From the NCBI RefSeq assembly GCF_036588685.1, contig NC_086381.1:41106001-41170000 (forward strand): a DNA stretch of 64,000 bases, in the 5' to 3' direction. The notes under the pieces were generated by a model, which ran no database searches, had not been told where the DNA came from, and worked only from the letters and a program-made list of their open reading frames with translations. Positions 2,327 through 52,500 of this stretch are shown piece by piece (the stretch's first letter is position 1; each line of letters opens with the position of its first letter). The position numbers were made by a program, and so were the translations under genes. The DNA comes from Mytilus trossulus (Eukaryota).

Positions 2327-5300
2327 ATGTTTAAAGTCAAATATAACTACAAAGCCTCCATAGATACAGCCATTAACCTTTCTGTCGGAGATAAGATATC
2401 GAATGTTGAAGATCTTGGTAATGGTTGGTCAATGGGACATAATGTGTCAAGTGGAAAAACAGGAACATTTCCAACTAGTTATATTGCCAAAAACTTGACC
2501 TTCAAAGACAAGGTCAAAAGAATGTCAAGGGTAAGGAAGACCACTGACCAACTAGAGATAATGTATAAAGCCATATCTGCATACCAAGCTGACACAGATA
2601 CAGATATCAACCTTTGCGTTGGAGATACCATATCAAACGTTGAAGATGTCGGTAATGGTTGGTCAATGGGACATAATAAGTCAAGTGGGAAAACAGGAAC
2701 ATTTCCAACTAGTTATATTGCCAAAAACTTGACATTAAAAGACAAGGTCAAAAGAATGTCAATGGCGAAGAAGGCGACTGAAACACTAGAAATTAAGTTG
2801 AAAAACAAGAGTGAAGATACAGAGACTTTGGTTCCTCGGATCAAGGCCAAAATTCCTGATCATGTCTTACAAAGAAGACTTACTCGTGTTCCTGAACATT
2901 CTAATATTGTACAGAACAAAATTTCTAAAATTGTTCCAAAGCCAGTCAAATCCTTTGTCAACAGCAGCCGTGGAGATCACAGGATCGTGAAAGGCATCTT
3001 TGGGATATTTGGAGGTTTTATTGCCTGTGGAATCCTGTTTGTTCTCTTGAGATACAGTAATGAGTATTCTCTACAAATATCTTGCTACATAACAATAGGA
3101 TTTTCCCTCCCTATATGTGCAGCATTAGCCATTTCTACACACATGAGATGTATCTTTTTACTAATGGTTCCCAACCTGTTCACTGGAAAAGGACGAGCTG
3201 TATTCATGTCCATTATATTTGCCATGTTACTTGCTGGTCCCGTAGTAAACATTGTATACAATGCAGAGCAAGCATCGCAATCTATGGCCTGCACCCAGGA
3301 ACTGATCTATAACCAGACTTCCATCCTCAGAGGTCAACTAGAAGAACCAATTAGATTAATAGAAAGGAGAATTTATGAAGGCCTTGTCAAAATGAGGAAC
3401 ATTGCACATTCCATCAAAAATGCTATTGCACCAGTTACTAATGCAGTAAAAGTTTTTGCCGATGGTCTCAACACAGCTAAAAATGCACTAAAAAATGCAG
3501 CTAAGGTATTAGTTTTATTTACTTTGCATCATCTTTGCAGGTTAAAAAAAACCAACAGAATTTGTCTTTGCTTTAATTAACTCAATTTATTTTTTGTAAT
3601 TGATAAACACATTGCATTTTCATAGATATTTTAGTCTAGTGTTTTTTACATTCACAAAAGCAACAGAAAATTTGTATTTCTTTCAGCTCTTGAATTTGAG
3701 ATTCAATGTCACCTATAACACAAAACAAGCCAGAAAACTATAGTATTTCATGAAATAAATAATGGTTCCTTCAGTCTTAATTATATAAAACACAGGCAAA
3801 CTAAGTTTAAATAAATTGTTACCATATTTCTTCTAACTGTTTATATCATTTATCAGAGGATAATTCATTGGAAACATTTTCCTGTATTTAATTCCCCTCC
3901 CGTTTAACTGTATTTCTGTGCTTTCTATCTTTCCTTCCAATTAAATACATTTCCAAAGTTTCTAATTTTCCATCCCTGTTAATTGCATTTCTTAGCTTTC
4001 TATTTCTTCCTCTCCATTACAAGTATTTCAAAGCTTTTGATTTTTTTCCCTTCCTTAGTAGAATAGTTCCCTAGCTTCCTTTTTTTCTCTCCCCCACTCT
4101 ATTACCAGTAAAAGTTCTTTGTCTCCTCATTACCAGTAAAAGTTCTATTTCTGCTCTTTACCAGAAAAGTTCTTTTTCTGCTCTTTACCAGTAAAAGTTC
4201 TTTTTCTGCTCTTTACCAGTAAAAGTTCTATTTCTCCTCATTAACAGTAAAAGTTCTTTTTCTGCTCATTACCAGTGAAAGTTCTTTTTCTGCTCATTAC
4301 CAGTGCAAGTTCTTTTTCTGCTCTTTATCAGTAAAAGTTTTTTTATTGCTCTTTACCAGTAAAAGTTCTTTTTCTGCTCATTACCAGTGAAAGTTCTTTT
4401 TCTGCTCTTTACCAGTGAAAGTTCTTTTTCTGCTCTTTACCAGTGAAAGTTCTTTTTCTGCTCTTTACCAGTAAAAGTTCTTTTTCTGCTCTTTACCAGT
4501 AAAAGTTCTTTTTCTGCTCTTTACCAGTAAAAGTTCTTTTTCGGCTCATTACCAGTGAAAGTTCTTTTTCTGCTCTTTACCATTAAAAGTTCTTTTTCTG
4601 CTCTTTACCAGTAAAAGTTCTTTTTCTGCTCATTACCAGTGAAAGTTCTTTTTCTGCTCTTTACCAGTAAAAGTTCTTTTTCTGCTCTTTACCAGTAAAA
4701 GTTCTTTTTCTGCTCATTACCAGTGAAAGTTCTTTTTCTGCTCATTACCAGTGAAAGTTCTTTTTCTGCTCTTTACCAGTAAAAGTTCTTTTTCTGCTCT
4801 TTACCAGTGAAAGTTCTATTTCTGTTCTTTACCAGTAAAAGTTCTTTTTCTGCTCTTTACCAGTGAAAGTTCTTTTTCTGCTCTTTACCAGTGAAAGTTC
4901 TATTTCTGCTCTTTACCAGTAAAAGTTCTTTTTCTGTTCTTTACCAGTAAAAGTTCTTTTTCTGCTCATTACCAGTAAAAGTTCTATTTCTCCTCATTAC
5001 CAGTAAAAGTTCTTTTTCTGCTCTTTACCAGTGAAAGTTCTTTTTCTGCTCTTTACCAGTAAAAGTTCTTTTTCTGCTCTTTACCAGAAAAGTTCTTTTT
5101 CTGCTCATTACCAGTGAAAGTTCTATTTCTGTTCTTTACCAGTGAAAGTTCTTTTTCTGCTCTTTACCAGTGAAAGTTCTATTTCTGCTCTTTACCAGTG
5201 AAAGTTCTTTTTCTGCTCATTACCAGTGAAAGTTCTATTTCTGTTCTTTACCAGTAAAAGTTCTTTTTCTGCTCTTTACCAGTAAAAGTTCCTTTTCTGC

Positions 5301-7881
5301 TCATAACCAGTAAAAGTTCTTTTTCTGCTCTTTACCAGTAAAAGTTCTTTTTTCTCCTCATTTATCAAATTTGCAACCTATTTATTTTTTCCACTATCAC
5401 ATGTATTCAATGATTTCTTTTTTATTCTCCCATTTTCATATATTTCTACTTTGTTATTGCCTTCATGTTAAATGATTTTTTCTCTTTATAATGATTTTAA
5501 TACTTTGCATTTTCCCTAGGAATGTAGTAGAGGAGTGGAAAAAGCCCAGTTTGAATGTGAGAGGGGAATAAACTATGCTAAAAATAAGTGTGAAGAAGAC
5601 CTGAGAAGGGCAGACCCTTCAAATAAAGTCATCAAATTTGGTAAAGACGTAGCCAGAACTGGGGAAGACGTAGTGAGGAAAATAGAAAGAACTGGGGATA
5701 ACATTGTGAGGTCGCTAGGAAGGATTTTTGGGAAAAAAAGGAAAAGAAGGAGGGCTATGACAGAGGAAGAGAAAAATGCAATAGAGTTAGCTAAACAGCT
5801 GATGGAACAAGAAACACCATTACAAAGATATGGTGATTACCTTAACTCTAACAATGATGAAACAATAACCAATAACACCAGACTGCATAACCAACATGCA
5901 CTGAAAAGGTAGGTTAGAGAATAAACATACAGAGCATGCACTGAAATGGTAGGGATAGATTATACAAATAAATGTACCTTGATCTATAACGTTTTTCTAT
6001 TATAAATTGGTACTTCGATTTGTCTCATTGGAACTCATGCCACATCTTCATATATCTATAATTAACATGCACTGAAATGATAGGTTAGATAAAAAAAAAA
6101 ATCATCAACATGTGGTAAAATGGTAGGAGAATAAACATAAACCCCATGCATGCACTGAAATGGTAAGTTAGAGACAAACATAAGCAGCATGCTCTGAAAA
6201 AGTAAGTTCAAGAGAACAAACATAAACACCATGCACTTAGAGTTTCAATTCAGACAGAATAAACACATATAGGTATGAAGAAAAAAACACTAGTAAACGT
6301 CATGCAACATTTATTCTTTACCCTGAATGAATTTTTTTTCCAATACCCACCAACAAAAGTTGTTTTGATTTAGGGCATTTAAAGGACCAATTTATTAACT
6401 CTGCCACATTGTTTGTACAGAGTTAAGACATTTGCCTGTTGCCTTTATTATATAATTTTACCCCCTCTTTGTTTGGTTTAAGTGTTTTTTAAAGTATGCA
6501 TCAAAGAGCAAAACACAACAAAATGTAAAAAAATAAGAACTTTACTGTACAGTAAATTACAGTACTTCTTTGATTAATGATGGATATTTGTTTCCTTTGT
6601 AGGTCAAGGAGAGGTTTTTTGCATCATTTATGTATTGTTCTAGACATTGGGGCAGTTTGTAAAGTTGTCCAAGTAGGAACGTATGTTGCCTGTACACCTC
6701 TAAAATTCATAGCGCATATCATAGAAGTAGCTAATAATGAGATAAATTCCTTCTTAGATGGGATCACCTCCTTCTTCTCATTCGATTTTGAAGGAGGTTT
6801 TGATGCCGATGGGAAAATCAATTCCTCAAAAACAGCAGCACAAATCATTTCCCAAGTTAAAGCAGACATACAGTCTAGAACTAAATGGATTCTAACAGTA
6901 TCTGGTATAGTCAGTAACGTTCTTGTCATCACTCTATTGTTATTATTTCTTAAGTCAATCTTCTATCTTAAGAAGTTTCTCAGTAAGGATCGTTATGACA
7001 ATATCTACATTTCAAAGGCTTTTAAGACTTACGACCAGCAATGCAAGGCACAGGGAAAACCATCAGTTTTACCGCTGAAGAGAAAAGAATGCAGAAACTA
7101 CGCTGACACTCGGTCACCATGGCTATCATCAAAAGAAATAGATCATGCTAAAACTGGTATTACTAAAATTGGAATTCATATCTTGATAGCTACTGTTATA
7201 ATTTTCTTTGACTATGTTCTTTACTTTGTTTTAAAGCTTATTGATCGCTTTGGTAACCTGAATATAAATATCGGTGGCAACAGTTCCCTGAGTGTATCTG
7301 TAGAGGGCAGTGGATTTATTTCAGCATTTCTGAGAGCGTTCCTAGGCACTGTTGAATTAGATTCTGACTTTGGTGTTGAGTTTAACCTAACAACTTGTAT
7401 CCCAACTCCCAGTAAACCAGATGATGATAATATTTACAAGTTTAGTTTCCTTTACTTCTTTGCATTTGTGTTCCTTATAATGCAGGCTTATGGTTTACGT
7501 TTACGAAGGAAAATTGTCACATTCTTCTATCCAGAGCGAGATATTGAGAGGATAAAATATCTTCATGAGAAAATACGACACCAGAGAAAATCTCTGATGA
7601 ATTGGTTGACCCAGCATGTAATATCTAGAAACAAGCAATTCCATACGGAAAATCGTATATCTTTCCGCGGATGGATGGAATACCGATGTCCAATATTTGC
7701 TAATTGCTTTTGCCCTTGTCTTACATATAAGACATGCATTAGCTGTGAAAATAAGGATGGCGGTAAAATTCGCTTCCATCAATGTGATAAATGTCAATCT
7801 AATTACTGTGAGGAATGTTTTGGAGATATGAATTACATTTGTCTTGTTTGTAAAACTGAAACAAACATATCTAAACCTTAG
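2327..7881 (+). CDS. Gene A1: tandem-SH3 + DC-STAMP domain multi-pass membrane protein with C-terminal RING-like Cys8 domain (DCST1/DCST2/Sneaky-like); join(2327..3505,5520..5908,6603..7881), 948 aa
   Basis: Canonical GT-AG junctions keep frame (AAG|gtatta...ccctag|GAA, phase 0; AG|gtaggt...ttgtag|G, phase 2). Two SH3 motifs (GD.I.NV...GW..G....GKTGTFPTSYI). DC-STAMP-family motifs RC..LL.VP.LF.GKGR, GP..NI..N, S..C..EL, DRYDNIYI, LPL, LRRKI..FFYPERD.ERI. C-terminal CxxC...CxxC....CxxC.......CxxC. Confidence 0.9.
4100..5362 (+). repeat. 28-bp minisatellite (~45 copies) in A1 intron
   Basis: Unit ctttaccagt[a/g]aaagttctttttctgct. Confidence 0.95.
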
Positions 7882-8082
7882 TCTAATACATGTATATAGC
7901 AACATTCTGTCATGAATGCAGATCTTGAAGTGTAAATAATAAATATAATTTTTATAAACCTGTTATATTTTTTAACAAAAAATGTACTTTGAAAAATAAA
8001 AATTTGTAGAGAAATTGTTCTTTCTCTTTTAATAATAGCAAACCAATAGTACAATTAACTACCAGACAGTGCATTTAATCAA

Positions 8083-8246
8083 GAAATTATTCTTTCATGC
8101 CATGCTCTATGCTAATTTTAACATGGGTAGGCATTATATTTGTTAATATCTTAAAACTGAGTGTTAGTGAGGTATTAAATGTTTACAAATATAATGCATA
8201 CCCATGTTAAAATGAGCATAAAGCATGGCATGATAGAATTATTTCC
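8083..8246. repeat. Fold-back inverted repeat (~60-bp arms) downstream of A1
   Basis: tcatgccatgctctatgctaattttaacatgggtaggcattatatttg pairs with caaatataatgcatacccatgttaaaatgagcataaagcatggcatga. Confidence 0.75.
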
Positions 8247-9780
8247 ATTCTAAAAGGAATATTTTGAACTTCTGTACTTCGAAGCGGCCCTAAAGAAGTC
8301 ATTCGAAATGTCGCCATTTTATTTTGATGAACAAAAACAGTTTAGGACAATCAGCAGTTCATCAATAAAAAAAGAACAAAAACATTTTAAACTTACTTTT
8401 AGAATGTTTTAATTTAATTTCCTAGCGAGCAACACCAACAAAAATGTCCATTTTGATATCTGGCATTTTTCAAAATTCATATGACGTTGCAATTTCAATT
8501 GTGACGTCAATCATGTGCAGCCAGCCCATGTTCTATTCAATTAGAACATGGCTTTGTACCCAAAGCTAAAGAAGAACGTCATATTAGAACTCAATTTGAA
8601 ACATACCAACTTACCAAACAATAGACACTGTATTTGACCAATTAATAAGGGTGAGAGGATGGGACAAAAACACAAAATCAAAATATTCTTTAGACAGTTT
8701 TCAACCTGCATTCTTATAATCTCATTGGACATAATATCATATAAAAGATGAAGTATGATTGCCAATGAGACAAATATCCAACAAAAACCAAATGATTAAG
8801 ATGTCAACAACCATAGATCACCAGTTAGCCTTCAACAATGAGCAAAACTCATTCAGCAGAGTTTGCCTAAAAAAAAACATATTGATAAAATGTGAATTTA
8901 ATCAATATAATGAAAGATGTTCTGAGATTCTATCAGACAGAGCGTATAGTTATGCTGATTTTGTAGATCAAATTACCACTTCATAGGTCAGTGTGAGTTT
9001 GGTTGGTTTTCTAAGAATTGATAAATTTTCTAATCTGATTCTTTATCTCATTTCCTGGGAAGAATTTAAGGGAAAAGAGCCATTTCCTACAGGCAAAGCA
9101 GTTGCGGTTTCAGTTTGTAATCTGGATTTGTTTTCTCAATTCATTTATGACTTTTGAACAGCTGTTTACTACTGGTGCCTTTATCTATTTCTATTTCCAT
9201 GTTATTTGGTAATGCAGCAGAAGATTTATTTTCTCTTTTATTTGGGGTTTTTATCCTCTGAACCACAAATAAGAGACATTTTATTTTTAAAGAAAAAGGT
9301 ATTCTGTGATGCATTGTGGGTAATACTTTTAGCAGAATACATCAAAACTTTTCAATATCCTGACAATCACCTAACAAAAAAGGAAAACACTTTATGTAAA
9401 TTTTACGCATTGGAAGTGCATTTAACTTCATCAGGAGTGCACAATGCCATAGATTTAAGAGAATATATTTCCTAAACAATGGAAATTCAGCCAGTGGCGT
9501 GACATTATTTTCATTTTAGGTACCAAAACAAAATCTCCCATAATTCTGGATAAGTTTTGAAACAGCTTATTGGTAGATTTTGCCAAGTGCCAACAGGAGT
9601 GATGGAAGTACATTTAGATTGCTAAATACAGGTCTCCTCAAAAGTTGATGCTAATGTCCTTGAATGTACTGATTGCATGGCACTCATCCTCATATTTTAT
9701 TGCATAGATTAACTTTGTCGTATTTGGCACAACATTTTGGATTTTGGATCCTCAATGCTCTTCAACTTTGAACTTGTTTG

Positions 9781-10020
9781 GGCCACACTTAAAAATATTT
9801 TGGTTTGCCCAAAGGTTGAGACAGTGGGAGGTAGGTAGGTATTTCTTTTTTTTCTTCTTCAAAAAAAGAAATTGAAGTATGATATCAGATGTTTATTAGT
9901 CTTCATGCCTATTTGATTGAAAAAAAAATCTTCAAATCAGGACAATAAAAGAATTTGAGTAGGCAGCTTTTTTCTGGGTAGGTAGCGTTTGGGCAAACAA
10001 ACCTATTACTTATTATGGCC
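9781..10020. mobile_element. MITE-like insert inside the retrozyme-like repeat
   Basis: ggcca...tggcc ends with subterminal inverted gtttgcccaaa / tttgggcaaac. Confidence 0.55.
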
Positions 10021-10049
10021 TTGGCTTTATAAATATTTTGTTGATATGA

Positions 10050-10093
10050 GCGTCACTGATGAGTCTTATGTAGACAAAACGCACGACTGGTGT
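10050..10093 (+). ncRNA. Degenerate type I hammerhead ribozyme within a retrozyme-like dispersed repeat (~9700..10130)
   Basis: Helix I GCGTCA/TGGTGT; core CTGATGA; helix II GTCT-tatgt-AGAC; AAAAC in place of GAAAC; GAC in place of the GTC cleavage triplet. Predicted inactive. Confidence 0.7.
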
Positions 10094-12381
10094 ACTACAT
10101 CATAATCCTGGTACCTTTAATAACTATTAATGACATTTTCTCAAATGTTGTGTTGTCCCTTTATGTTACTCATCTTATTTTGTCCCTCTTGATGAGTTAA
10201 GTCTAATGAGGGATGCTTTGTGATTTTTGTAATTGTAGTTCAGTGATCAGGGTTGACTCCAACAAAGAACATGTTTATGTCTGGCACTTAGACCTTGTAT
10301 GGGACATCAAATTGGAATTACAAGATATCTAAATGTAAAGCAATGTGAAGTCATAATTGGACCATTACAATCTGGTGCCCAATGGATTTTTTTCTTTCAA
10401 ATTGTAAATTTTCTTGTTTTTATCAGAAAACAGAAATTCAAAAGTTTATAAATTTTCTGTGGCACAAGCAAATGACCAGGAAATAGATATAAACAGCTTA
10501 TAGTCTATCGGGAATGGCTCTTTTCCTTTAAGTATTCCTCAGGAAATAGATATAAACAGCTTATAGTCTATAGGGAATGACTCTTTTCCTGCAAGTCTTC
10601 CTCAGGAAATGAGATTAACATGATAAAGTTCCCAAAATTTGTCCATTTTCTAGAAAAATAATGCAACATACAATCAAGTTTAAATTAATTACTTCATATA
10701 CAAAATTTGTGTATCAGAAAAACAGATTATTATCTTACTAAAATCTGAGAACAACCAGTATGGTGGTTAAATGGACATGATTTTTTTACTTTTGATCAAT
10801 TTAAGGCTTTTTTAATTTAAAGCTGACTATTATATAGTTTTGAATTTTATTGAAGACAAAGTAAATTATATGTACAATTCCAATCCCCCTTCCCCTTTTG
10901 CGATTATTTGGGGTTTACCTGTCAATTTAAAAATTTTCAATTTAAAGTGTGCTGTTTCAGTGAATAAATACAATAGCTAGTTTTCTTTTTGGAATTTATT
11001 CAATGGAACCTTTACATCTCTCAATTTTTAGTTACACAAAATAATAAAATCCTACTGAATAAAGAAAACATGTACCAACACTCAATAATGACACACATTT
11101 TAAGAGCTAAAATAATTGATTCCACAATTATGCCAAATACAGCCAAATATAAGACAACTGAAGCACAAAAATATGGATTTAATTTGCTCAGTACAGAAAA
11201 AAAGACTTGTAAAATAATTTTTAGCAGTGAATAAACGTACATACATCCAAAGTCATCCAACAACAAACAATAATAAAACATTTAAGCAAATTTTACCCAA
11301 CTATGAAATATATGTCTTGGAGACATAAATAAAGCAGTTTTGTACTATACATGAAAACTAGTGATTAATTTAATGATGTACAAAGAATGCTTTTACATAA
11401 CTCTTCAATTGAATACATTGCTATTGTCCTTTGTGTTGTTTATTCATGGATATTAAAATGTTTTTGAAATTTTGTCAGAAATCAACTTTGAATCACTGTT
11501 TACATCATTATTGAAAATATGTTTTCCACTTGTTTTGGGAGTTAACACATGTATTTTTCACCCCAAAAAAGGTGAAAAGGGTATGTGTGGGGGGTTTTGG
11601 ACTGGGCACATTGATCCTAAATTCAGCTCTGTTGTCGAGCTGACTGTTTATACAGTTATAAGTATTTAGAAGATACTTTAGTACTCTGCGTCATAGATAT
11701 GTTTCTAGTGCTATGTTTTTTTTTTAAATCTTTGTAATTGAAAGATCACACTACTAAATTTAAAGTCAAAAGTATACCCTATTTCAAGTTTGAACTTTTG
11801 AACACTGGTTTTACTACTGTTGCCTTTAAGATACAAGATGTTGACAAACAGAGGATGAGTGCCATGTCATCAGTACATTTTTAACCCTAGCATCATCTCC
11901 TGAGGGGACCTGTATTTGGTCTGTACTAGATAGATATTGGTGCCAATATCCAACATATCCTTATTTAACAGTGGCAATCTAAATGTACTACATCAATCCT
12001 GGCCAACCTTCTTTGCAGAACCTACCAATAAGCTGTTTCAAAATCCAAAGTATTATATGAGATTTCATTGTTAATTACCCTAAAATGAAAATGATATGAT
12101 GTCCTGTCATTGGCTGAACTTCCATTGTTTAAGAAGTTGTTAATGGCAAATAACAAAGTGTTGGTATATTCTCTTGAAAATATTACCCACAATTCATGAC
12201 TTTCTGAAGCAGCTTATTACATGAATTTTTAATATAATCTTTTGAATATATATGAAATATTTTTGATTGAACATTAAACATGCAAGATTCAATTCATCAA
12301 TGATAAATTCAAATATCAGCAATGAAAGATATCTAATAACTTTATGTTTAAAATTGTAAGGTTACTTGATTTGAGATAAAA

Positions 12382-12840
12382 ACAAGAATGTGTCCCCAGT
12401 ACACAGATGCCCCATCCACACTATCATTTTCTATGTTTAGTGGACCGTGAAAATGGGGGAAAACCTCCAATTTGGCATTAAAACTAGAAATATCATATCA
12501 TAGGGAACGTATAGTACTTTTCGATTTTTGATTTAACTTCAACTTCATCAAAAACTACCTTGACCAAAAACTTTAAGCTAAAACGAAAAAAGAGAAGAAC
12601 GAACAGACGTTCAAACAAGAAAACATAATAGATATAGGAAGATGTGGTGTGATTGCCATTGAGACAACTCTCCATCCAAATTACATTTTATAAAAGAAAA
12701 CCATTAAAGGTCAATGTACAGCCTTCAACACGGAGCCTTGGCTCACACCGAACAAAAAGCTATAAAGGGCCCCAAAATTACTAGTGCAAAACATGATTCA
12801 AATGGGAAAACCAACGGTCTAGTTCATAATGGGGCATAAA
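12382..12840 (+). mobile_element. Family 1 element interrupted by another dispersed repeat (~12630-12820)
   Basis: Same 5' end and core as 1..448; the terminal ggggcataaa resumes at ~12830. Confidence 0.65.
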
Positions 12841-14199: not shown

Positions 14200-14307
14200 A
14201 TGTAATTGTTTATTTCCTGAATTTCAATAGTTATAAGTATCCAAAAATATTTCCCTGAAAATGAACATTCATATCAAATATTTCTGTTGTATAAACTGCT
14301 TCTGAAG
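14200..14307 (+). promoter_or_regulatory. Putative non-coding first exon of B1 (donor after 14307, acceptor at 15523)
   Basis: Conserved with 47315..47430 (aattgt.tatttcctgaatttca...taaactgcttc.ga.g|gtaag). Confidence 0.5.
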
Positions 14308-14510
14308 GTAAGATGCTTCTCTTATTATTACCATATTATTTTCTTAAATCATTTCTATTTCATTTTATCCTTGTGAGAAAAAAAGATACGGGGTTAACAT
14401 AAAAGACAAAAAAAAAACTACCTAAAAACAAAAGCTCACCAGAGTCATATAATGACAATAATACAAATGTGAGTGATATATATTCATAATCATAGAAGTA
14501 ATGCATTTGA

Positions 14511-25421: not shown

Positions 25422-25537
25422 GCTAGTCTAAATATCACAATATATATGGTGTCAGTAAATTTCATATGGGGGTGAGGGTGAACTTTTACCCCATATGGAA
25501 TTTACTGACCCCATATATGTGGTATTAGTTCACTAGC
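25422..25537. repeat. Palindromic MITE-like hairpin
   Basis: gctagt...gtcagtaaatttcatatgggg pairs with ccccatatggaatttactgac...actagc. Confidence 0.7.
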
Positions 25538-40976: not shown

Positions 40977-41200
40977 CGGACGACCCCCCCTTGAAAACAA
41001 AAGTCAATGTTCTGTTCGAATTGTGACTGTTAAAAACAAGTTTGTGAGTCCAATGAACCCCCCTTTGGAAATTCCTGGCTACGGGCCTGAAGCCTGGTAT
41101 CTTTGGTGAGTCTTTTGTACACAAAAAGAACATTTGGTGTACTAAATTATAAGCCTGGTATCTTCGGTGATTCTTTGGTAGACAAAAAGGCCATTTGGAG

Positions 41201-41396
41201 TGTCAACGTATATTTGTTCCATCTGGAAACTTTATTATAAACAATGTCATAATACTTGTACCTGTTGGAACAAATATTCTATAATATTTAGTCCATTAGG
41301 AACATCTACTGTAATATTTATTCCTGTGGAAATAATATTCCAGAATAGTTTTTCCATTTGGAACTTATATTATAAAGGAACTTTTATTCCGTGACA
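41201..41396. mobile_element. ~200-bp TGTCA...TGACA element (duplicated at 44495..44690)
   Basis: Short terminal inverted repeats; interrupts a satellite monomer; third copy at 50238..50448. Confidence 0.8.
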
Positions 41397-44245: not shown

Positions 44246-44383
44246 CATACCCGTAGCCAGGGGGGGTTCGGACGACCCCCCCCCTTGAAAACAAAAGTCA
44301 ATGTTCTGTTCGAATTGTGACTGTTAAAAACAAGTTTGTGAGTCCAATGAACCCCCCTTTGGAAATTCCTGGCTACGGGCCTG
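44246..44383. mobile_element. MITE (138 bp), intact copy; the copy at 36122..41089 is split by the copia element
   Basis: TIRs catacccgtagccagg / cctggctacgggcctg; apparent TSD aagcc. Confidence 0.85.
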
Positions 44384-46011
44384 AAGCCTGGTATCTTTGG
44401 TGAGTCTTTTGTACACAAAAAGAACATTTGGTGTACTAAATTATAAGCCTGGTATCTTCGGTGATTCTTTTGTAGACAAAAAGGCCATTTGGAGTGTCAA
44501 CGTATATTTGTTCCATCTGGAAACTTTATTATAAACAATGTCATAATACTTGTACCTGTTGGAACAAATATTCTATAATATTTAGTCCATTAGGAACATC
44601 TACTGTAATATTTATTCCTGTGGAAATAATATTCCAGAATAGTTTTTCCATTTGGAACTTATATTATAAAGGAACTTTTATTCCGTGACACTTAATTATA
44701 AGCCAGGTATCTTTGGTGAGTCTTTTGTAGACAAAAAGGACATTTGGAGTACTAAATTATAAGCCTGGTATCTTTGGTGAGTCTTTTGTAGACAAAAAGC
44801 ATGTTTGGAGTACTAAATTATAAGCCAGGTATCTTTGGTGAGTCTTTTGTAGACAAAAAGCATGTTTGGAGTACTAAATTATAAGCCTGGTATCTTTGGT
44901 GAGTCTTTAGTAGACAAAAAGTACATTTGGAGTACTAAATTATGAGCCTGGTATCTTTGGTGAGTCTTTTGTACACAAAAAGCATGTTTGGAGTACTAAA
45001 CTATAAGCCTGGTATCTTTGGTGAGTCTTTTGTTGACATAAAGTACATTTGGAGAACTAACTTATAAGCCTGGTATCTTTGGTGAGTCTTTTGTGGACAA
45101 AAAGCATGTTTGGAGTACTAAATTATAAGCCAGGTATCTTTGGTGAGTCTTTTGTAGACAAAAAGCATGTTTGGAGTACTAAATTATAAGCCTGGTATCT
45201 TTGGTGAGTCTTTTGTAGTCAAAAAGCATGTTTGGAGTACTAAATTATAAGCCTGGTATCTTTGGTGAGTCTTTTGTAGACAAAAAGTACATTTTGAGTA
45301 CTAAATTATGAGCCTGGTATCTTTGGTGAGTCTTTTGTACACAAAAAGCATGTTTGGAGTACTAAATTATAAGCCTGGTATCTTTGGTGAGTCTTTTGTT
45401 GACAAAAAGTACATTTGGAGTGCTAAATTATAAGCCTGGTATCTTTGGTGAGTCTTTTGTACACAAAAAGCATGTTTGGAGTACTAAATTATAAGCCTGG
45501 TATCTTTGGTGAGTCTTTTGTAGACAAAAAGTACATTTGGAGTACTAAATTATAAGCCTGGTATCTTTGGTGAGTCTTTTTTAGACAAAAAGTACATTTG
45601 GAGTACTAAATTATAAGCCTGGTATCTTTGGTGAGTCTTTTGTAGACAAAAAGGACATTTGGAGTACTAAATTATAAGCCTGATATCTTTGGTGAGCCTT
45701 TTGTAGACAAAAGGCATGTTTGGTGTACTAAATTATAAGCCTGGTACCTTTGATAACTATCATCCTAATTTAAGTATTCTGACAAAGGGACAACAAAGAA
45801 ATATATTTCTGTAAAAGTTGGCTATATATAGTATGTATTCCAACTAAATAATATGTGTTACATTGACATAAATTATTACAATAAAATATCAAATATTTTT
45901 TCCTGGTGATAATTCATTACAAATATATTTGTGAACTGTTTAGGCAATTTTTACATAAAGTTTAACTTTGTCTGATGAATTGTTTTTGAACAGTAATATC
46001 TCTAAAAAAAA

Positions 46012-47028
46012 ACTAGATATCATTGAGATGGAAGCCATCTCTGCGAGCCCCGCTGTCAATAACGTTGGGTAAATAAATATAGTGTGAATCAAAATTGTAA
46101 GCGATGGACAGACCAACAGACAGACAGACCTTTGATCTAGGAAGTTGTACATACATCATGACACACCCTCTGGTGTTGGTTAAAATGGATGTCAAGTATA
46201 ATATTTGAAATCAAAACGGTTCCCAAGATATAGAGCGGACACAATCTTCAACTCAGGACACAGGGTTGTCAACTAAAACCAAAGTTTTTTTTTCCTTGAC
46301 CTTTGACCTAGGAAGTTGTACATTCATCATGACACGGTTGATGATGGTGGTTAAAATGGATGTCAAGTATAAACTTTGAAATCATAAAGGTTATCCAGAT
46401 ATGGAGCGGACACGATCTTTACCACAGGACACAGGGTTGTCAACTGAAACCAAAGTTTTTGACCTTGACCTTTGACCTAGGCAGTTGTACATACATCAGT
46501 TGTACATACACCATGATCACCCTCTGGTGTTGGTTAATAAACATGTTAAGTATTAAGTATAATATCAGAACGGTTATCTAGATATGTAGCGGACACGATC
46601 TTCATCACAGGACAAGGGGTTGTCAACTGAAACAAAGTTTTTGACCTTGACCTTTGACCTAGGAAGTTGTACATACATCATGACACACCCTCTGGAGTTG
46701 GTTAAAATGGATGTCAAGTATAAACTTTAACATCATAAGGGTTCTCAAGATATAGAGCGGACACGATCATCACCACAGGACACAGGGTTGTCAACTGAAA
46801 CCAAAGTTTTTTTACCTTGACCTTTGACCTAGAAAGTTGTACATACATCATGACACGCCCTCTGGTGGTGGTTAATAAACATGTAAAGTATAAAGTATGA
46901 AATCATAATGGTTTTCTAGATATGGAGTGGACACAAAGTTAAAGTGTTACGGACGGACGGACAGACAGACGGACGGACGGACAGACTGATCACTATAGGG
47001 CGACCCGACTTTTAGTCAGGGCCCTAAT
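46012..47028 (+). mobile_element. Helentron/pearl-like element, family 3, with ~5 tandem cores of ~170-190 bp
   Basis: Repeated gaccttgacctttgacctaggaagttgtacatac cores, (ggac)n microsatellite, terminal hairpin tagggc...gcccta. Confidence 0.75.
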
Positions 47029-47314
47029 TTTGATTCATATTTTAATTCTGTGATATCACCTATAATAGCACATAAAAACCTGATTTTATTATCCAATTTT
47101 ATCCAGAGTACATATTAGGTTGTGTGTGAAAAAATTAACGTATGATTTCAATACAATATTAAGGATATATGGTATGAGTGCCTATTAGTAATTTTTTCCA
47201 TCATCCTGGACCAAAGAACTCATATGTGACTGTATCTTTATTTGGAATTATAATTAATATTAATTGTAATAGTGTTAATCATATCACATGACCTTATGTT
47301 ACATGGTCATTAAT

Positions 47315-47430
47315 ACAATTGTCTATTTCCTGAATTTCACTGATCATCAATATACATACACTGTTTGACTGAATATGAATATTCATATATCACATTAAAG
47401 TTTTTCCTGCAGTTTAAACTGCTTCAGATG
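47315..47430 (+). promoter_or_regulatory. Putative first exon of B2 (donor after 47430)
   Basis: Homologous to 14200..14307; atg|gtaagc donor. Confidence 0.5.
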
Positions 47431-48076
47431 GTAAGCTGATTATTTTATTATTTTATTTTTTATAAAATATCATTTTATTTGATTTTGTCTTACCAAAAAG
47501 AGATAAGGGTATAACATAAAGCAATTTACCAGATAGGGACAGTTATAGAAATCTTAAATCATATATACAAGTGAGTAATATGGCAAGCTGTAAAGATTAA
47601 ATGGTTATTGCTTGCATGCTTAACATTTACTGGAATATGAAAGCTTGATAAAGTATAGATATTTCGTGGATGTATAGATTCCCACACTGCAAAAGGGTAT
47701 TACTATATTTCTATATTTCTGCCAAGAACAGATATTTAAGTAGTGAGAAAAAATATTTTTCTCTCAACGATCAAGAAATGTGAAAATAGCACAAAAATTG
47801 GAAAAAAGTCATTCTTGTACTGACATAACTCATTTTAGAAAGGTATGCAAAAGATATATATCCAAAGTAGAAAGAAATTGAAAAAAAGTAAAGGCTCTTC
47901 TTCTAAATACTTTTCATCTAATAATATATCTAATAAAAATTAAAAATATTATGGTTGAGTACTTATCATTTGAAGAAACCAGAAAATCTAAAAACATAAC
48001 GCTTTTAAAAAGTTGGTTCAACTTGCAAAGAATAAATATCTTGGTTTTTTTTGCACAGACAGAAAGGAAAGTAAGA

Positions 48077-49902
48077 ATGACACATGCAGACAAAACACCA
48101 GGGAGTTCAAAACTTGAATCCATCAAGAGAAAGTCTGATGACCCACCCTCATACAATGATGCCATGAGATTTCCTGACAATTACCACAATACATTTCCTG
48201 ACAAACTATTTAAAAGTGAACGCCATACATTTACCTGCCTGAAGGCTATATTTGGTATCTTTTCTGGAATATTGACTGGTGGAATACTGTTTGTTCTGCT
48301 AATCTACAGTTTTGGTTTTGCCTTGGATATAGCTGGATATATATCTATTGGAGTGACAGCCTTAGCATGTCTAGGTCTAGCACTATCTGTCCATGTCCGC
48401 TGTATCGTGGTACTGATGATTCCTAGTCTATTTACTGGTAGAGGAAGGGTAGCCATCTTGGCAGTTATATTGGGACTCCTGTTATCAAGACCAATCAAAA
48501 ACATCTCTATAAATACTTCAGAAGTATCCAGAAGTATGGCCTGTAGTACCGAACTCTTTCAGAATCAGTCACACTCTCTCAGACAACAGCTCCAGGTACC
48601 AATAGAGCAGATTAAAGTAGCCTTGGGTAAACAGGCAGAGGATATAAAGATGTTAGGAACAGCAATAGATAAAGCCATAGAACCAATTTATAATGCTCTT
48701 GTTGCTGTTAAAAAAGGTGTCAAGTTAGTGAGTGGTGCATTGGATACTGCTTCACAGGTAAAATATTAAGCCAGTGTTGCAGTGTATTCAGATTCACAAG
48801 TAAAATTTAAGAACCTTAGTGAGCAGGCTCATATACCCCACATCCCCACATTGTCATTGGAGAAATTAAATAAGTGTAAGGAAAAAAATTGTATAAGAAA
48901 AAATATTGAATAATAATTTCCTGTCAATATCCACATCTACATGCATAGTATGTCCTTATTATTTACAAAATTTCATGAAATTCTGTTGTGTGGTTTCAGA
49001 GTAGTTGAGATGACAAACTGATGCAGAAGTACATTGAAGCAAATAAGTTCAAAGGGGTGTAACTCCTAGAAAAAAAAATGAATCAAAATTTGTTGTCGAA
49101 ATGCACATCTACGTAGTATGTCCTTTATATACAAAGTTTCATGAAATTCTGTTGTGTGGTTTGAGAGGAGTTGAGGTGACAAACTGTGGAAGTAGTACCT
49201 TAAAGCAAATAAGTTCAAACAGGTGTAACTCCTAGAAAAAAAATTGAATCATAATTTCCTGTTGGTATGCACATCTACATAGTATGTCCTTATTATCTGA
49301 AAAGGTTTCGTGAAATTCTGTTGTGTGGTTTGAGAGGAGTTGCGATGACAATCTGTTGCAGTAGTTCATTAAAGTAAATAAGTTCAAAGGGGCGTTACTC
49401 CTAGAAAAAAAATTGAATCATAATTTCCCGTCGATATGCACAACTACATAGTATGTCCTTGTTATCTGAAAAGGTCTCGTGAAAATCTGTTGTGTGGTTT
49501 GAGAGGAGTTGCGATGACAAACTGTTGCAGTAGTACACTAAAGTAAATAAGTTCAAAGGGGCATAACTCCTAGAAAAAAAATTGAATCGCAATTTCCCTT
49601 CAACATGCACAACTACATAGTATGTCCTTATTAAATGAAAAGGTTTCGTGAAATTCTGTTGTGTGGTTTGAGAGGAGTTGCGATGACAAACTGTTGCAGT
49701 AGTACGTTAAAGTAAATAAGTTCAAAGGGAAAAAAATTGAATTGCAATTTCCCGTCGATATGCACAACTACATAGTATGTCAATATTATCTGAAAAGGTT
49801 TCGTGAAATTCTGTTGAGTGGTTTGAGAGGAGTTGCGATGACAAGAAACAGGACTGACGGACGGACGGACTGACGGACGGACGGACGGACGGACTGACGG
49901 AT

Positions 49903-49956
<54 letters not shown>

Positions 49957-52500
49957 AAGTGGAAACCTGACTGCTTCACATGTAGGAGAATTATTCAGTG
50001 ATAGCCCCAGAAAAGTTATAATAGTAGATTGTGATTTTGGAAATATCATCTTGGACTTCAACATTCTTGGTATTTTAACATTTTGTACATTCATCCTGCA
50101 GTGTAAATAACAATATGTATTCAGATAAAGGCAACAGTAGTATACCGCTGTTCAAAACTCATAAATCCATGGACAAAAAACAAAAACAGGGTAACAAACT
50201 AAAACCGAGGGAAACGCATTAAATATAAGAGGAGAACTGTCACGGAATAGAAGTTCCTTCATAACATAAGTTCCAAATGGAAAAACTTTTCTGGAATATT
50301 ATTTCCACAGGAATAAATATTATAGTAGATGTTCCTAACGGAATAAATAGTATAGAATATTTGTTCCGACAGGTACAGTTATTATGACATTGTTTATAAT
50401 AAAGTTTCCACTGGAACTTCTGTTCGGTGGAACAAATATACGTTGACAGAACAACGACACAACACCGAAAGGCAACACACACAGAAACTGACCAAGCATC
50501 AGACAAAATACAACGAGAATAACAAATATAACAACAAAACCAAATACATGAATTTGGGATAGACAAGTACCGTGCCACGTCTTATCTTAATAAGTCAGAC
50601 ACATATGTATTTATTCCTACTCTATATATTTACAGGAGTGTGATAGAGTAATGAATGGTGTGTATTATGACTGTGTAAGAGAGCTCAACAAAGCATACAG
50701 TGCTTGTAAGAATACACTTAATAATGTTAAGAAGTAAGTATCATTAGTAGTACCTCATGTCTCACAGAGCTTTGATTTATTTCTCTATTGTTGAGAGTTA
50801 AACTAAGGTCATTTTCAAACTTTCCTGAACTTAGTTTCTACTTTTGTATGTATTGTATCAATATATTTTCCTACAATATTTGACCAAACTTTCATCATTT
50901 TAACTATTTTCAATATCTATATTTGCATCAGTAAATATTTTTGGTGCATAGATTAATTTCTACTTAATTCACGATGAATCAAAACAAATCTCCCCCTCTT
51001 TTTAGAAGAAAATATTCATATTCTTTTCAGTGGTAAACTCAATAGTTTTCAATGGTAAACTCAATAGTTCTCAATGGTAAACTCAATAGTTCTCAATGGT
51101 AAACTCAATAGTTCTTAATGGTAAACTCAATAGTTCTCAAGTGCACTCAATAGTTCAAAACAATGTGATTAGCCTGTATAAAAAGTTTATACATTGATTT
51201 TGGGAAAATAACAATCAGCAAAAATTACAGTAGCCATCACATTTTTTGCAGGTATGTTCCAGGATTAGATTTAACACCTATCTGTAAAATCCTTGATATA
51301 GAACAGGTCTGTGTTATAGTCAAACCATCTTTTGTATGTTCACCAGTCAAAACGCTTGATAATGCAGCTGAGAAACTAGCAGAATCTGCTGTCAATCTGG
51401 TCAAGGAAGTCAATAAATGGTTTCAACTGAACATCATCAAGAAGTCCCAGATTGACAATGTTTATAATGCTTCTAAAACAGCTAAAGAATTGATAGCGGA
51501 GGTTGATGCCGCCCTAACAGACAAGAAAATAACATTCACTTACATCGTGGAAATTATGAGCAAACTTTTAGCTCTTTCCCTTCTGTTGTTACTAACCCAA
51601 TCATTTTTTTATTTGAAAAATTATCTAGCCAAGGATGAATTTGATAACATTTACATTACTTCCCAGTTTAAGGGTTATGATTCTGAAACACGCGAGAAAG
51701 GACAACAGGGTGTGTTACCTCTTCAAAAGAAGGAAAAGAAACTATACACAGATAGTACATCCTTCATGATGTCTCCAAAAGAAAGAAGTCAGAGTTTGAT
51801 GGGCATATCTCAGCTCCTCCTACATGTGTTACTGAGTGCTCTGATTGTGTTCCTTAACTATGTACTGTTCTATATATTGTTTCTTGTAAACAGGTATGGC
51901 CAGGTGAATGTAGAGGTCACTGGAAAAAGTAAAATAAACCTAAAGGTCAAAGGAGGACAAATGGCTGCCTTAATCAACAATTTTATAAATAACATTAACA
52001 TTGAAAACACGTACGAGGCTAGTTATAATACAACTGTATGCCTGCCAAGTCCTACGCCTCCTGATGCTACGGACATTCCAGTTCTTTGTTCAGCTTACGC
52101 TGCTGCTTTACTCCTGGTTTTACTGCAAGCCTACGGAGCAAGATACAATCGTAAAATATGTGCCTTCTACTATCCTGAACAGGAAATGGAACGTATCGCT
52201 TTTCTGCAGAAGAAAATCATTTACAACCGCAAGGGAAGGCACACTTTTATTAAACAGCATGTTACTTCATTAAAAAAACAAAAGATAGCTGAGCAGAAAA
52301 TGTCTGTTAAACAAATGTTATCTGGGATATGTCCCTGCTTTAAAGTGGAACAAACAGATCTAAAATTCTGTATGAACTGTGGAGCTAACCAAGGGTCTAG
52401 TCGTACATTACAAGCATGTAAGAACACGGACTGTGATGCAACTTATTGTTTGGAATGTTTTTATGATTTTGAACGTGTTTGTCCTATCTGTAGAAAATAA
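48077..52500 (+). CDS. Gene B2: DC-STAMP domain protein, paralog of B1; join(48077..48757,50636..50733,51252..52500), 675 aa
   Basis: Junctions CAG|gtaaaa...ttacag|GAG and AA|gtaagt...ttgcag|G keep frame. Exons 2 and 3 have the same lengths as in B1 (98 and 1249 nt). The ORF-track start at 47951 lies in the upstream intron. Confidence 0.9.
48812..49952 (+). mobile_element. Helentron/pearl-like element, family 4, with 5-6 tandem ~178-bp cores, in B2 intron
   Basis: Repeated gaaattctgttgtgtggtttgagaggagttg cores, (gacg)n microsatellite, terminal hairpin ttataccc.ccgc..gcg.ggggtataa. Confidence 0.75.
50238..50448. mobile_element. Inverted copy of the TGTCA...TGACA element with 4-bp TSD, in B2 intron
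   Basis: gaac|tgtcacgg...cgttgaca|gaac; reverse complement of 41201..41396. Confidence 0.8.
51030..51156 (+). repeat. 22-bp minisatellite (~5-6 copies) in B2 intron
   Basis: Unit tggtaaactcaatagttctcaa. Confidence 0.85.

What the first reader, a model, noticed from the sequence alone, without database searches (positions are those of the whole stretch)
2327..52500. Duplicated two-component DC-STAMP/DCST cassette (A1-B1, A2-B2): candidate paired cell-fusion/gamete-recognition system
Seen: four intact same-strand DC-STAMP-domain genes alternate A-B-A-B. A and B are distant paralogs with the same intron phases. The pair was duplicated as a unit: upstream 1280-1537 matches 27340-27632, and downstream ~25800-25870 matches ~53250-53310. 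Known: vertebrate DCST1 and DCST2 are neighbouring genes that act together in sperm-egg fusion, with Sneaky and SPE-42/SPE-49 as invertebrate relatives. Inference: A and B are obligate partners, and the locus encodes two alternative heteromers (A1/B1, A2/B2) with different extracellular specificity. These could act in gametes or in somatic/hemocyte fusion or recognition.
Basis: partly seen in the sequence, partly recalled or inferred. Interest (0 to 1): 0.85.

Follow-up and report, generated by a model that had tools for sequence, protein, structure and literature searches.

The report
Repeated mussel DC-STAMP-like gene pair
This stretch of a mussel (Mytilus trossulus) chromosome carries a pair of neighbouring membrane-protein genes that was copied as a block; they come from the family that includes sperm-egg fusion factors but sit on a separate mollusc branch, and whether the two work as partners is untested.

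Summary
Four intact, same-strand, three-exon DC-STAMP-domain genes lie in the order A1-B1-A2-B2. Both types have introns at the same two positions (phases 0 and 2). The pair was copied as a unit: dS is about 0.25-0.30 overall and 0.40 in the ectodomain of both A and B, with five colinear non-coding remnants. The genome is Mytilus trossulus, and my B1 model equals a RefSeq protein exactly.

New here:
- A third unit (A0-B0 plus a stub of the next A gene) lies 113 kb upstream.
- A and B are not DCST1/DCST2 orthologues. Those are multi-exon genes on two other contigs.
- A and B are sister clades inside a mollusc branch of the family. Its ancestral form has an N-terminal SH3 domain and a stalk-tip insert flanked by two polybasic motifs. 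Mussel B lost both.
- AU tests reject A+DCST2 (p 1e-5) and B+DCST1 (p 0.0015).
- All copies are under purifying selection, and the extracellular stalk diverges fastest.

A haplotig is excluded. The idea of obligate A/B partners with alternative specificities rests only on analogy.

The parts
2327..7881 (+). Gene A1 (948 aa). Coding exons 2327-3505, 5520-5908, 6603-7881. Two N-terminal SH3 domains (about 2333-2476 and 2567-2710) from an internal 234-nt duplication (2359-2547 ~ 2593-2781, 87%). DC_STAMP domain at 6994-7566. C-terminal Cys-rich RING-like finger.
15537..22575 (+). Gene B1 (667 aa). Coding exons 15537-16193, 17601-17698, 21327-22575. No SH3; short N-terminus with a PPSY motif. DC_STAMP domain and RING-like finger present.
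   Evidence: The model is identical to RefSeq protein P0001.
28607..31880 (+). Gene A2 (864 aa). Coding exons 28607-29563, 30005-30360, 30599-31880. One SH3 domain (about 28613-28756).
   Evidence: It is 94% identical over its full length to the M. galloprovincialis protein P0026, also 864 aa.
48077..52500 (+). Gene B2 (675 aa). Coding exons 48077-48757, 50636-50733, 51252-52500.
   Evidence: It is 95.6% identical to the M. edulis protein P0003.
1041..25892 (+). Duplication unit 1 (A1-B1 with flanks, about 24.9 kb). It is colinear with the upstream unit 0 at 80-93% identity, introns and intergenic DNA included. It is colinear with unit 2 in the exons plus five short non-coding remnants.
26168..27162 (.). 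Spacer between units 1 and 2: an 88-nt tandem array of 11 copies at 97% identity. The matching spacer after unit 0 has a single copy, so the array grew after the second duplication.
27325..53328 (+). Duplication unit 2 (A2-B2 with flanks, about 26 kb). Its A-B spacer is enlarged by a 61-nt satellite and a copia-type retrotransposon.
5700..6620 (+). A-type stalk-tip insert: the end of exon 2 and the first codons of exon 3, with intron 2 between them. It is bounded by two polybasic motifs, KKRKRRR and KRSKR. A2 has the equivalent at about 30150-30615. B lacks the insert.
   Evidence: The insert is disordered in the AF2 model of the A2 orthologue (pLDDT about 30).
36147..40976 (+). Ty1/copia-type LTR retrotransposon inside the A2-B2 spacer. 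It is a passenger, not part of the cassette. ORF 36288-40325; LTRs 36147-36287 and 40836-40976 are 99.3% identical.

Best explanation
SHOWN.
- The window holds two of the three copies of a two-gene unit in the Mytilus trossulus genome.
- Both genes belong to a third branch of the DC-STAMP/DCST family, found in molluscs with brachiopod and echinoderm relatives. It is distinct from DCST1 and DCST2, whose orthologues lie on other contigs.
- A and B are sister paralogues that split before mussels and scallops diverged.
- The unit was copied twice. A tandem duplication (dS about 0.3-0.4) gave A-B-A-B. Then a roughly 27.7-kb segment (A1, B1 and the 5' end of A2; dS 0.11-0.17) was copied to a site 113 kb upstream.
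- The tandem duplication that gave copy types 1 and 2 predates the M. edulis species complex.
- All copies are under purifying selection (omega 0.3-0.4). The membrane core is nearly invariant and the extracellular stalk changes fastest.

PREDICTED FROM SEQUENCE AND MODELS.
- Each protein has six membrane helices, cytosolic N- and C-termini, a long helical extracellular stalk braced by conserved cysteines, and a cytosolic DCST1-type RING-like zinc finger.
- A keeps the ancestral extras: one or two cytosolic SH3 domains, and a disordered stalk-tip insert between two conserved furin-type polybasic motifs. Mussel B has lost both.

INFERRED MECHANISM.
- A and B assemble in the membrane as a hetero-oligomer (probability about 0.4). 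The family's other paralogue pairs, DCST1/DCST2 and DC-STAMP/OC-STAMP, are reported or proposed to form complexes.
- A is cut by a proprotein convertase at the stalk tip (about 0.5) and recruits proline-rich cytosolic partners through its SH3 domain.
- The complex serves cell-cell recognition or fusion. Because canonical DCST1/2 are present, the role is more likely an added or somatic one than the core sperm-egg step. I put gametic and somatic/haemocyte at about 0.35 each.
- The joint copying of A and B needs no selection. Any segmental duplication of two adjacent genes copies both.
For: Genes and models.

Species. P0001 is 100% identical, and its contig length of 82,295,107 equals that of C9.

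Third unit and stub.

Tree: in the careful IQ-TREE (40 rows) the supports are DCST1 100/100 including the C2 locus, DCST2 100/99 including the C4 locus, A clade 98/93, B clade 99/98, and A+B 95/92.

AU tests: A+DCST2 p 1e-5; B+DCST1 p 0.0015.

Taxon names.

Substitution rates: dS and dN are congruent between A and B for every pair of units. By region, the stalk is 73% (A) and 71% (B) identical with dS 0.40 in both. The TM4-loop-TM5 block is 98-100% identical.

Topology: six hydrophobic segments. AF2 models show a stalk helix at 113-251 in B1 (pLDDT 73). In the A2 orthologue the SH3 domain has pLDDT 84-89 and the tip insert is disordered.

SH3 distribution: present in Pinctada, Crassostrea, a scallop B-clade protein, Mya, Haliotis and Lingula. 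Absent from the oyster DCST1 and DCST2 proteins scanned.

Polybasic motifs: conserved across the A clade, the scallop B-clade protein and Haliotis.

Literature: DCST1/2 form a complex and depend on each other (PMC8989947). A heterodimer with a stalk-like ectodomain is predicted for them (bioRxiv 10.64898/2026.05.13.724128).
Against: - There is no direct evidence for A/B interaction, for cleavage, or for the tissue of expression.
- The scallop A-clade and B-clade genes lie on different scaffolds, so linkage is not universal.
- The scallop B-clade protein still has SH3 and the tip insert. The A/B asymmetry seen in mussels is therefore young and not a defining feature of the pair.
- PPSY in B is not conserved even within Mytilus.
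- No window of the pairwise comparison shows omega clearly above 1; the maximum is 1.08 in one 60-codon window. Diversifying selection on specificity is therefore not shown.
- B0 has a 1-nt deletion that removes the last zinc ligands. One unit may thus be losing its B gene, which argues against strict co-dependence, unless the deletion is an assembly error.
- The placement of the mollusc branch next to OC-STAMP involves a long branch.
Confidence: 0.6

Rival explanations
1. A and B are obligate partners. Each unit encodes its own cognate heteromer (A1/B1, A2/B2, and A0/B0) with a distinct extracellular specificity, used in gamete recognition/fusion or haemocyte fusion.
For: - A and B were retained side by side and copied together twice, with congruent dS.
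- In both genes the extracellular stalk is the most diverged part between units: 71-73% identity against 98-100% in the membrane core.
- Family precedent exists for paralogue heteromers with a fast-evolving stalk tip (PMC8989947; bioRxiv 10.64898/2026.05.13.724128).
- A transcript annotated as DCST2 is induced in M. galloprovincialis haemocytes (PMC7023338), but which gene it represents is unknown.
Against: - Co-duplication follows from adjacency alone.
- The stalk omega is 0.41-0.46, so the data show relaxed or mixed constraint rather than demonstrated diversifying selection.
- The B0 finger is frameshifted.
- The scallop A-clade and B-clade genes are unlinked.
- No expression or interaction data could be obtained.
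Confidence: 0.2
2. A and B act independently, as homomers or with unrelated partners. Their adjacency is only a relic of the tandem duplication that created them, and the unit copies are neutral or dosage-driven segmental duplications.
For: - A and B are sister clades (95/92), so adjacency is the expected starting state.
- They are unlinked in the scallop.
- The heteroconch and gastropod sequences sampled fall outside the A and B clades.
- The region is rich in tandem arrays and transposons that favour rearrangement.
Against: - Both types have been kept intact under purifying selection since before the mussel-scallop split.
- The family's two other paralogue pairs are reported (DCST1/DCST2) or proposed (DC-STAMP/OC-STAMP) to act together (PMC8989947).
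- In mussels the architectures have become complementary: A keeps SH3 and the tip insert, and B has neither.
Confidence: 0.35
3. A and B are the mussel orthologues of DCST2 and DCST1 (or the reverse), so the locus is the conserved sperm DCST1/2 pair, duplicated.
For: [quoted passage not shown] The best named vertebrate hits of B exon 3 are DCST1 at 24-26% identity.
Against: - Separate multi-exon loci on C2 and C4 group with oyster and vertebrate DCST1 (100/100) and DCST2 (100/99).
- AU tests reject A+DCST2 (p 1e-5) and B+DCST1 (p 0.0015).
- A and B are each other's closest relatives.
Confidence: 0.02
4. The second pair is an assembly artefact: an allelic haplotig placed in tandem.
For: None beyond the general frequency of haplotigs in heterozygous bivalve assemblies.
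Against: - dS between copies is 0.25-0.40, and introns and spacers are largely unalignable between units 1 and 2.
- A1 has two SH3 domains and A2 has one.
- Each copy has its own orthologue at 92-96% identity in sister species.
Confidence: 0.01

Closest known systems
DCST1/DCST2 (vertebrates; Sneaky in Drosophila; SPE-42/SPE-49 in C. elegans)
   Same: - DC_STAMP domain.
- Precomputed Pfam families Dcst2 (PF26039) and zf-RING_DCST1_C (PF26037).
- Six-pass topology with a long helical extracellular stalk and a C-terminal 8-Cys finger.
- Two diverged paralogues that lie next to each other in the genome.
   Different: - A and B are not orthologous to them. The mussel has its own DCST1 (C2) and DCST2 (C4), and those two are unlinked.
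- A and B are sister to each other.
- They lie in same-strand tandem rather than head-to-head.
- They have only three coding exons, against at least 11 coding segments at the C2 (DCST1) locus and at least 7 at the C4 (DCST2) locus in the same genome.
- A carries N-terminal SH3 domain(s) and a stalk-tip insert flanked by polybasic motifs.
- Interaction and sperm expression are untested.
DC-STAMP / OC-STAMP (vertebrate osteoclast and giant-cell fusion)
   Same: - DC_STAMP domain and multi-pass topology.
- A paralogue pair proposed to act together.
- In the unrooted tree, the mollusc branch falls on the OC-STAMP side of a 95/92 split.
   Different: - OC-STAMP lacks the C-terminal RING-like finger that A and B keep.
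- The OC-STAMP branch is long (1.64), so the grouping may be an artefact.
- No vertebrate DC-STAMP sequence was available to me.
[quoted passage not shown]
   Same: - Same branch, and the same SH3 plus DC_STAMP plus finger architecture (Pinctada, Crassostrea, Mya, Haliotis, Lingula).
- The ESM Atlas holds a mollusc cluster of 80 proteins, 69% of them with SH3.
   Different: - These are automatic predictions with no study behind them. I found no paper on them.
- In this sample, only Mytilus A1-type proteins (A0 and A1 here, M. galloprovincialis P0176, M. californianus P0177) have two SH3 domains, and only the mussel-type B proteins (Mytilus and the unnamed P0007) pair loss of SH3 with loss of the tip insert.

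Membership tests
DC-STAMP family (Pfam PF07782) | DC_STAMP domain match above the curated cut-off | tested here: met
   173-178 bits against a cut-off of 25, with full-length profile coverage, in all four genes. The same holds in the own-genome scan.
DC-STAMP family (Pfam PF07782) | Multi-pass membrane topology | tested here: met
   Six hydrophobic 19-residue segments sit at matching positions in A and B. They are helical in both AF2 models. This is a prediction only.
DCST subgroup (DCST1/DCST2-like) | C-terminal cytosolic RING-like Cys-rich finger (zf-RING_DCST1_C) | tested here: met
   Precomputed PF26037 is listed for P0001 and P0026. The C-x2-C ... C ... C ... YC-x2-C ... C-x2-C pattern aligns with DCST1 tails. 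The local Pfam scan did not report this family.
DCST1 orthogroup | Groups with vertebrate and invertebrate DCST1 in a tree | tested here: not met
   The DCST1 clade (100/100) contains the C2 locus, not A or B. Holding B with DCST1 is rejected by the AU test (delta lnL 40.9, p 0.0015).
DCST2 orthogroup | Groups with vertebrate and invertebrate DCST2 in a tree | tested here: not met
   The DCST2 clade (100/99) contains the C4 locus. Holding A with DCST2 is rejected by the AU test (delta lnL 59.4, p 1e-5).
DCST1/DCST2-type two-component system | The two paralogues bind each other and depend on each other for stability | not testable with these tools
   No multimer prediction is offered. The claim rests on analogy to PMC8989947.
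DCST1/DCST2-type two-component system | Testis- or sperm-restricted co-expression | not tested
DCST1/DCST2-type two-component system | Neighbouring genes, head-to-head with a shared 5' region (mouse) | tested here: not met
   A and B are neighbours, but in same-strand tandem, 7.7 kb (A1-B1) and 16.2 kb (A2-B2) apart.
DC-STAMP/OC-STAMP group | Groups with vertebrate DC-STAMP/OC-STAMP in a tree | tested here: inconclusive
   A 95/92 split puts the mollusc branch on the OC-STAMP side. However, OC-STAMP is a long branch, lacks the finger, and no DC-STAMP sequence was in hand.

The most novel reading that the evidence does not exclude
Bivalves evolved, independently of DCST1/DCST2 and DC-STAMP/OC-STAMP, a third paralogue pair of stalked DC-STAMP-family proteins that works as a heteromer. 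The A subunit is primed by convertase cleavage at the stalk tip and wired to the cytoskeleton or to signalling through its SH3 domain. In Mytilus, block duplication of the pair has produced alternative complexes whose diverged stalks set the specificity of cell-cell recognition, for example gamete compatibility within the hybridising M. edulis species complex.
Probability: 0.12. Interest if true: 0.8.

Novelty: new variant of a known kind. Interest (0 to 1): 0.45.

Why it matters
DC-STAMP-family proteins include some of the few fertilisation and cell-fusion factors shared by vertebrates and invertebrates, and DCST1/DCST2 and DC-STAMP/OC-STAMP are each reported or proposed to act as a paralogue pair.

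This locus shows that molluscs have a further, unstudied branch of the family. It has its own sister pair, an SH3 domain that DCST1, DCST2 and OC-STAMP lack, and a conserved double polybasic site at the stalk tip.

If A and B do pair, that would be a third independent case of 'duplicate, then heteromerise' in this family. Three naturally diverged units within one genome would then be available for swapping experiments.

If they do not pair, the locus is an ordinary lineage-specific tandem expansion. It also warns that the RefSeq label 'DCST2-like' in molluscs does not mean DCST2.

Tried and rejected
The only indirect clues are contig lengths. M. californianus A and B sit on one 120-Mb contig. 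The scallop A-clade and B-clade genes sit on scaffolds of 0.90 and 1.22 Mb.
- Solved structures: the sequence search found nothing below E 0.2. Foldseek of the B1 model against the PDB found nothing at E <= 1e-3, only generic long-helix hits.
- Homology searches: the full-length A search returned only Mytilus proteins because of the tool's word limits. Names for unnamed representatives came from cluster look-ups. P0006, P0007, P0027, P0029, P0032, P0034, P0035, P0039 and P0049 remain without a taxon.
- AU tests on the 91-row alignment did not finish in time. They were redone on 40 rows.
- SH3-ligand idea: B N-termini have no PxxP motif, and PPSY is not conserved. I dropped the idea that the A SH3 domain binds the B tail.
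- Other content of the window: ten other ORFs have no Pfam match. An Rfam gathering scan of the window gave 0 hits.
- Literature: I found no paper on this branch or on SH3-DC-STAMP fusions.
- Joined step: spliced proteins were never sent to a search tool as joined letters. Searches went exon by exon by reference, or used database ids (P0001 equals B1; P0026 is the M. galloprovincialis orthologue of A2). Exons were joined only inside local scripts, for dN/dS, hydropathy, the identity check against P0001, and local BLAST identity comparisons with database proteins. The C2 and C4 rows in the trees are tblastn pieces joined with X.

Full report
**What is in the window.**
The window is AT-rich (about 31-35% G+C) and has no N. 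Nine long ORFs stand out. Eight of them are the first and last coding exons of four plus-strand genes. The ninth belongs to a retrotransposon. Pfam finds a full-length DC_STAMP domain (173-178 bits, cut-off 25) in the last exon of each gene. It also finds SH3 domains at the start of the two A genes: two in A1 and one in A2.

I compared stop-to-stop translations between the four regions and read the junctions. This gives the same three-exon structure for all four genes, with a phase-0 intron after exon 1 and a phase-2 intron after exon 2 at aligned positions:
- A1: 2327-3505, 5520-5908, 6603-7881 (948 aa)
- B1: 15537-16193, 17601-17698, 21327-22575 (667 aa)
- A2: 28607-29563, 30005-30360, 30599-31880 (864 aa)
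- B2: 48077-48757, 50636-50733, 51252-52500 (675 aa)

None has an internal stop. [quoted passage not shown] That protein's contig length equals the length of the window's contig C9, so the genome is M. trossulus. A and B share only 32-45% amino-acid identity.

**Duplication as a unit, and a third unit.**
A1/A2 exons are 87-90% identical in nucleotides, and B1/B2 exons 88-89%. Introns and spacers of units 1 and 2 no longer align with default settings.

A Pfam scan of the whole genome finds six single-exon DC_STAMP domains, all on C9. They are the four in the window and two more 113 kb upstream. I fetched that region. It holds A0, which has two SH3 domains and is 93.5% identical to A1. It also holds B0, which is 86.7% identical to B1.

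Unit 0 is colinear with unit 1 at 80-93% identity over about 23 kb, introns, spacers and the same intronic tandem arrays included. The colinearity runs on past B0. It continues through a single copy of the 88-nt repeat and the A2 upstream region, and reaches the first 93 nt or so of A2 exon 1. There it stops, leaving a stub that carries a TGA.

The history is therefore two steps. A tandem duplication gave A-B-A-B. Then a segment of about 27.7 kb (A1, B1 and the 5' end of A2) was copied to a site 113 kb away.

Synonymous divergence agrees between the two gene types:

| Pair | A genes, dS | B genes, dS |
|---|---|---|
| units 1 vs 2 | 0.30 | 0.25 |
| units 0 vs 2 | 0.31 | 0.24 |
| units 0 vs 1 | 0.11 | 0.17 |

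In the stalk region alone, dS between units 1 and 2 is 0.40 for both A and B.

Each window copy has its own orthologue in a sister species:
- A1 and P0176 (M. galloprovincialis): 95%
- A2 and P0026 (M. galloprovincialis): 94%
- B1 and P0002 (M. edulis): 92%
- B2 and P0003 (M. edulis): 96%

Between paralogues the identity is 81-84%. The tandem duplication that gave copy types 1 and 2 therefore predates the M. edulis species complex, and the second pair is not a haplotig. For the later A0/A1 and B0/B1 split the order relative to speciation is unresolved: A0, A1 and the M. galloprovincialis A1 orthologue form an open trichotomy.

**Where A and B sit in the family.**
One HMMER search with A1 exon 3 against 1.84 billion representatives gave 792 relatives. 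Cluster look-ups supplied names for thirty key ones. The genome also has two multi-exon DC_STAMP loci, on C2 and C4.

I built three trees of the region homologous to exon 3: FastTree with 163 rows, IQ-TREE quick with 91 rows, and IQ-TREE careful with LG+C20 PMSF and 40 rows. All three agree on the following (supports from the careful tree):
- The DCST1 clade (100/100) holds mammals, Pleurodeles, oyster DCST1 and the C2 locus.
- The DCST2 clade (100/99) holds Conger, insects, Saccostrea and the C4 locus.
- A and B belong to neither.
- The A clade (98/93) holds Mytilus, Crassostrea virginica, Pinctada and Mizuhopecten.
- The B clade (99/98) holds Mytilus, Mizuhopecten and unnamed relatives.

In the careful tree the A and B clades are sisters (95/92); the 91-row quick tree leaves their relation unresolved. 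They sit inside a mollusc group with heteroconch (Mya, Potamilus) and gastropod (Haliotis, Lottia) clades. In the larger trees, brachiopod and chiton relatives lie nearby; echinoderm relatives did so only in the 163-row FastTree.

AU tests reject A+DCST2 (delta lnL 59.4, p 1e-5) and B+DCST1 (delta lnL 40.9, p 0.0015). In the unrooted tree, a 95/92 split puts the mollusc group on the same side as bird OC-STAMP and a Latimeria DC-STAMP-like protein. That branch is long, though, and I had no vertebrate DC-STAMP sequence, so I leave this relation open.

The true mussel DCST1 and DCST2 genes are not even linked to each other.

**Architecture.**
Both types have six hydrophobic segments at matching positions. 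Three are in exon 1 and three in exon 3. A loop of about 210 residues in B, or about 310 in A, lies between the third and fourth segments and carries seven conserved cysteines.

The AF2 model of B1 (pLDDT 73, pTM 0.52) makes this loop a long helical hairpin, with a helix running from 113 to 251. The model of the A2 orthologue P0026 (pLDDT 66) shows the same hairpin. It also shows a confident SH3 fold (pLDDT 84-89) and a disordered insert of about 95 residues at the hairpin tip. With cytosolic SH3 and finger domains, the hairpin must be extracellular. This matches the stalk-like ectodomain predicted for DCST1/2 in bioRxiv 10.64898/2026.05.13.724128. These are predictions, not measurements.

The A insert is bounded by two polybasic motifs, KKRKRRR and KRSKR. 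Both are kept in C. virginica, Pinctada, the scallop A-clade and B-clade proteins, and Haliotis. Mytilus B, Mya P0043 and Lingula have no insert.

N-terminal SH3 is likewise widespread on this branch. It occurs in Pinctada, Crassostrea, the scallop B-clade protein, Mya, Haliotis and Lingula. It is absent from echinoderm relatives and from oyster DCST1 and DCST2. So A keeps the ancestral architecture, and mussel B has lost both extras. The PPSY motif of B1 and B2 is not conserved in M. californianus, B0 or P0007. I give it no weight.

**Selection.**
Overall omega is 0.33 for A1/A2 and 0.37 for B1/B2. By region:
- The TM4-loop-TM5 block is 98-100% identical (omega 0.02-0.07).
- The stalk is the most diverged part in both genes: 73% and 71% identity, omega 0.41 and 0.46.
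- dS is lower in the membrane blocks (0.11-0.20) than in the stalk (0.40). This may reflect gene conversion, but that is an inference.

Pairwise data therefore fit 'different ectodomains on a constant core'. They do not show diversifying selection.

B0 has a 1-nt deletion 30 nt before the stop that removes the last cysteines of the finger. It also shows raised omega in the stalk (0.73) and tail (0.58). It may be decaying, or the deletion may be an assembly error.

**Function.**
Nothing here measures function. The family precedent is:
- Mouse DCST1 and DCST2 co-precipitate.
- The zebrafish proteins depend on each other for stability.
- OC-STAMP and DC-STAMP are proposed to form a complex (PMC8989947).

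That precedent, the long joint retention of two sister paralogues, and their complementary architectures in mussels make an A/B hetero-oligomer my preferred model, at about 0.4. Co-duplication is no argument for it, because adjacent genes are copied together anyway.

Against strict partnership, the scallop A-clade and B-clade genes are on different scaffolds, and B0 may be broken.

Since canonical DCST1/2 are present, a role outside the core sperm-egg step is at least as likely as a gametic one. A 'DCST2' transcript rises in M. galloprovincialis haemocytes after myticin C treatment (PMC7023338), but its gene is not identified.

**Limits.**
- Spliced proteins were searched exon by exon by reference or through database ids. 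The joined search step was left out, and exons were joined only in local scripts.

**Verdict.**
The cassette is a lineage-specific, thrice-copied pair from an unstudied SH3-bearing branch of the DC-STAMP family. It is not a DCST1/2 pair. The two-component, alternative-specificity idea remains a reasonable but untested hypothesis.

Noticed in passing
G000:C9:40989948-41007182 (A0, B0) and C9:41014074-41014181 (stub); loci L012, L016, L013, L017, L020: A third A-B unit lies 113 kb upstream of the window. It is followed by a relic of the next A gene: about 31 codons of the SH3 start with one TGA. This shows that a segment of about 27.7 kb (A1, B1 and the 5' end of A2) was copied.
   Followed up: yes
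G000:C9:41007140-41007182 (end of B0): B0 has a 1-nt deletion 30 nt before the stop. It replaces the last C...CxxC zinc ligands with an unrelated tail. B0 also has PTSY in place of PPSY, and raised dN/dS. It is either a decaying copy or an assembly error.
   Followed up: partly
G000:C2:73304955-73315559 (+) and G000:C4:76840807-76851523 (-); loci L015/L019 and L014/L018: The canonical DCST1 (C2) and DCST2 (C4) orthologues are multi-exon genes on different contigs. They are therefore not neighbours in this mussel, unlike in vertebrates.
   Followed up: partly
window 5700-5908 + 6603-6620 (A1); 30150-30360 + 30599-30615 (A2): Two furin-type polybasic motifs flank the disordered stalk-tip insert of A. 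They are conserved in oyster, pearl oyster, scallop and abalone relatives. The second motif spans the exon 2/3 junction.
   Followed up: partly
window 16172-16825; 18046-19799 and 20927-21345: Two intronic tandem arrays are built from splice-junction sequence. A 41-nt unit repeats the end of B1 exon 1 plus its GT donor. A 44-nt unit repeats the exon 3 acceptor plus its first codons. The same arrays occur in B0, so they predate the second duplication.
   Followed up: partly
window 34584-36121 and 41396-45752; 36147-40976: A 61-nt satellite is split by a Ty1/copia-type element with an intact 1345-aa ORF and 141-nt LTRs that are 99.3% identical, so the insertion is young. An Rfam gathering scan of the window found no RNA family, hammerhead included.
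   Followed up: partly
window 457-1040, 33720-34448; L020 3906-4924 (inverted): A dispersed repeat sits at the left edge of unit 1, downstream of A2, and just after the stub that follows unit 0. It may have played a part in the rearrangements.
   Followed up: no
window 6900-7300 (A) and 21600-22000 (B), the TM4-loop-TM5 coding blocks: dS between paralogous copies drops to 0.03-0.12 in the membrane-core blocks, against 0.4-0.7 in the stalk. This suggests gene conversion between units, or constraint on synonymous sites.
   Followed up: no
window 4097-5364 (A1 intron 1), 26168-27162, 48896-49844 (B2 intron 1), 46127-46936: Further tandem arrays have periods of 28, 88, 169 and 171 nt. The 88-nt array has 11 copies here and a single copy in the matching spacer after unit 0.
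   Followed up: partly
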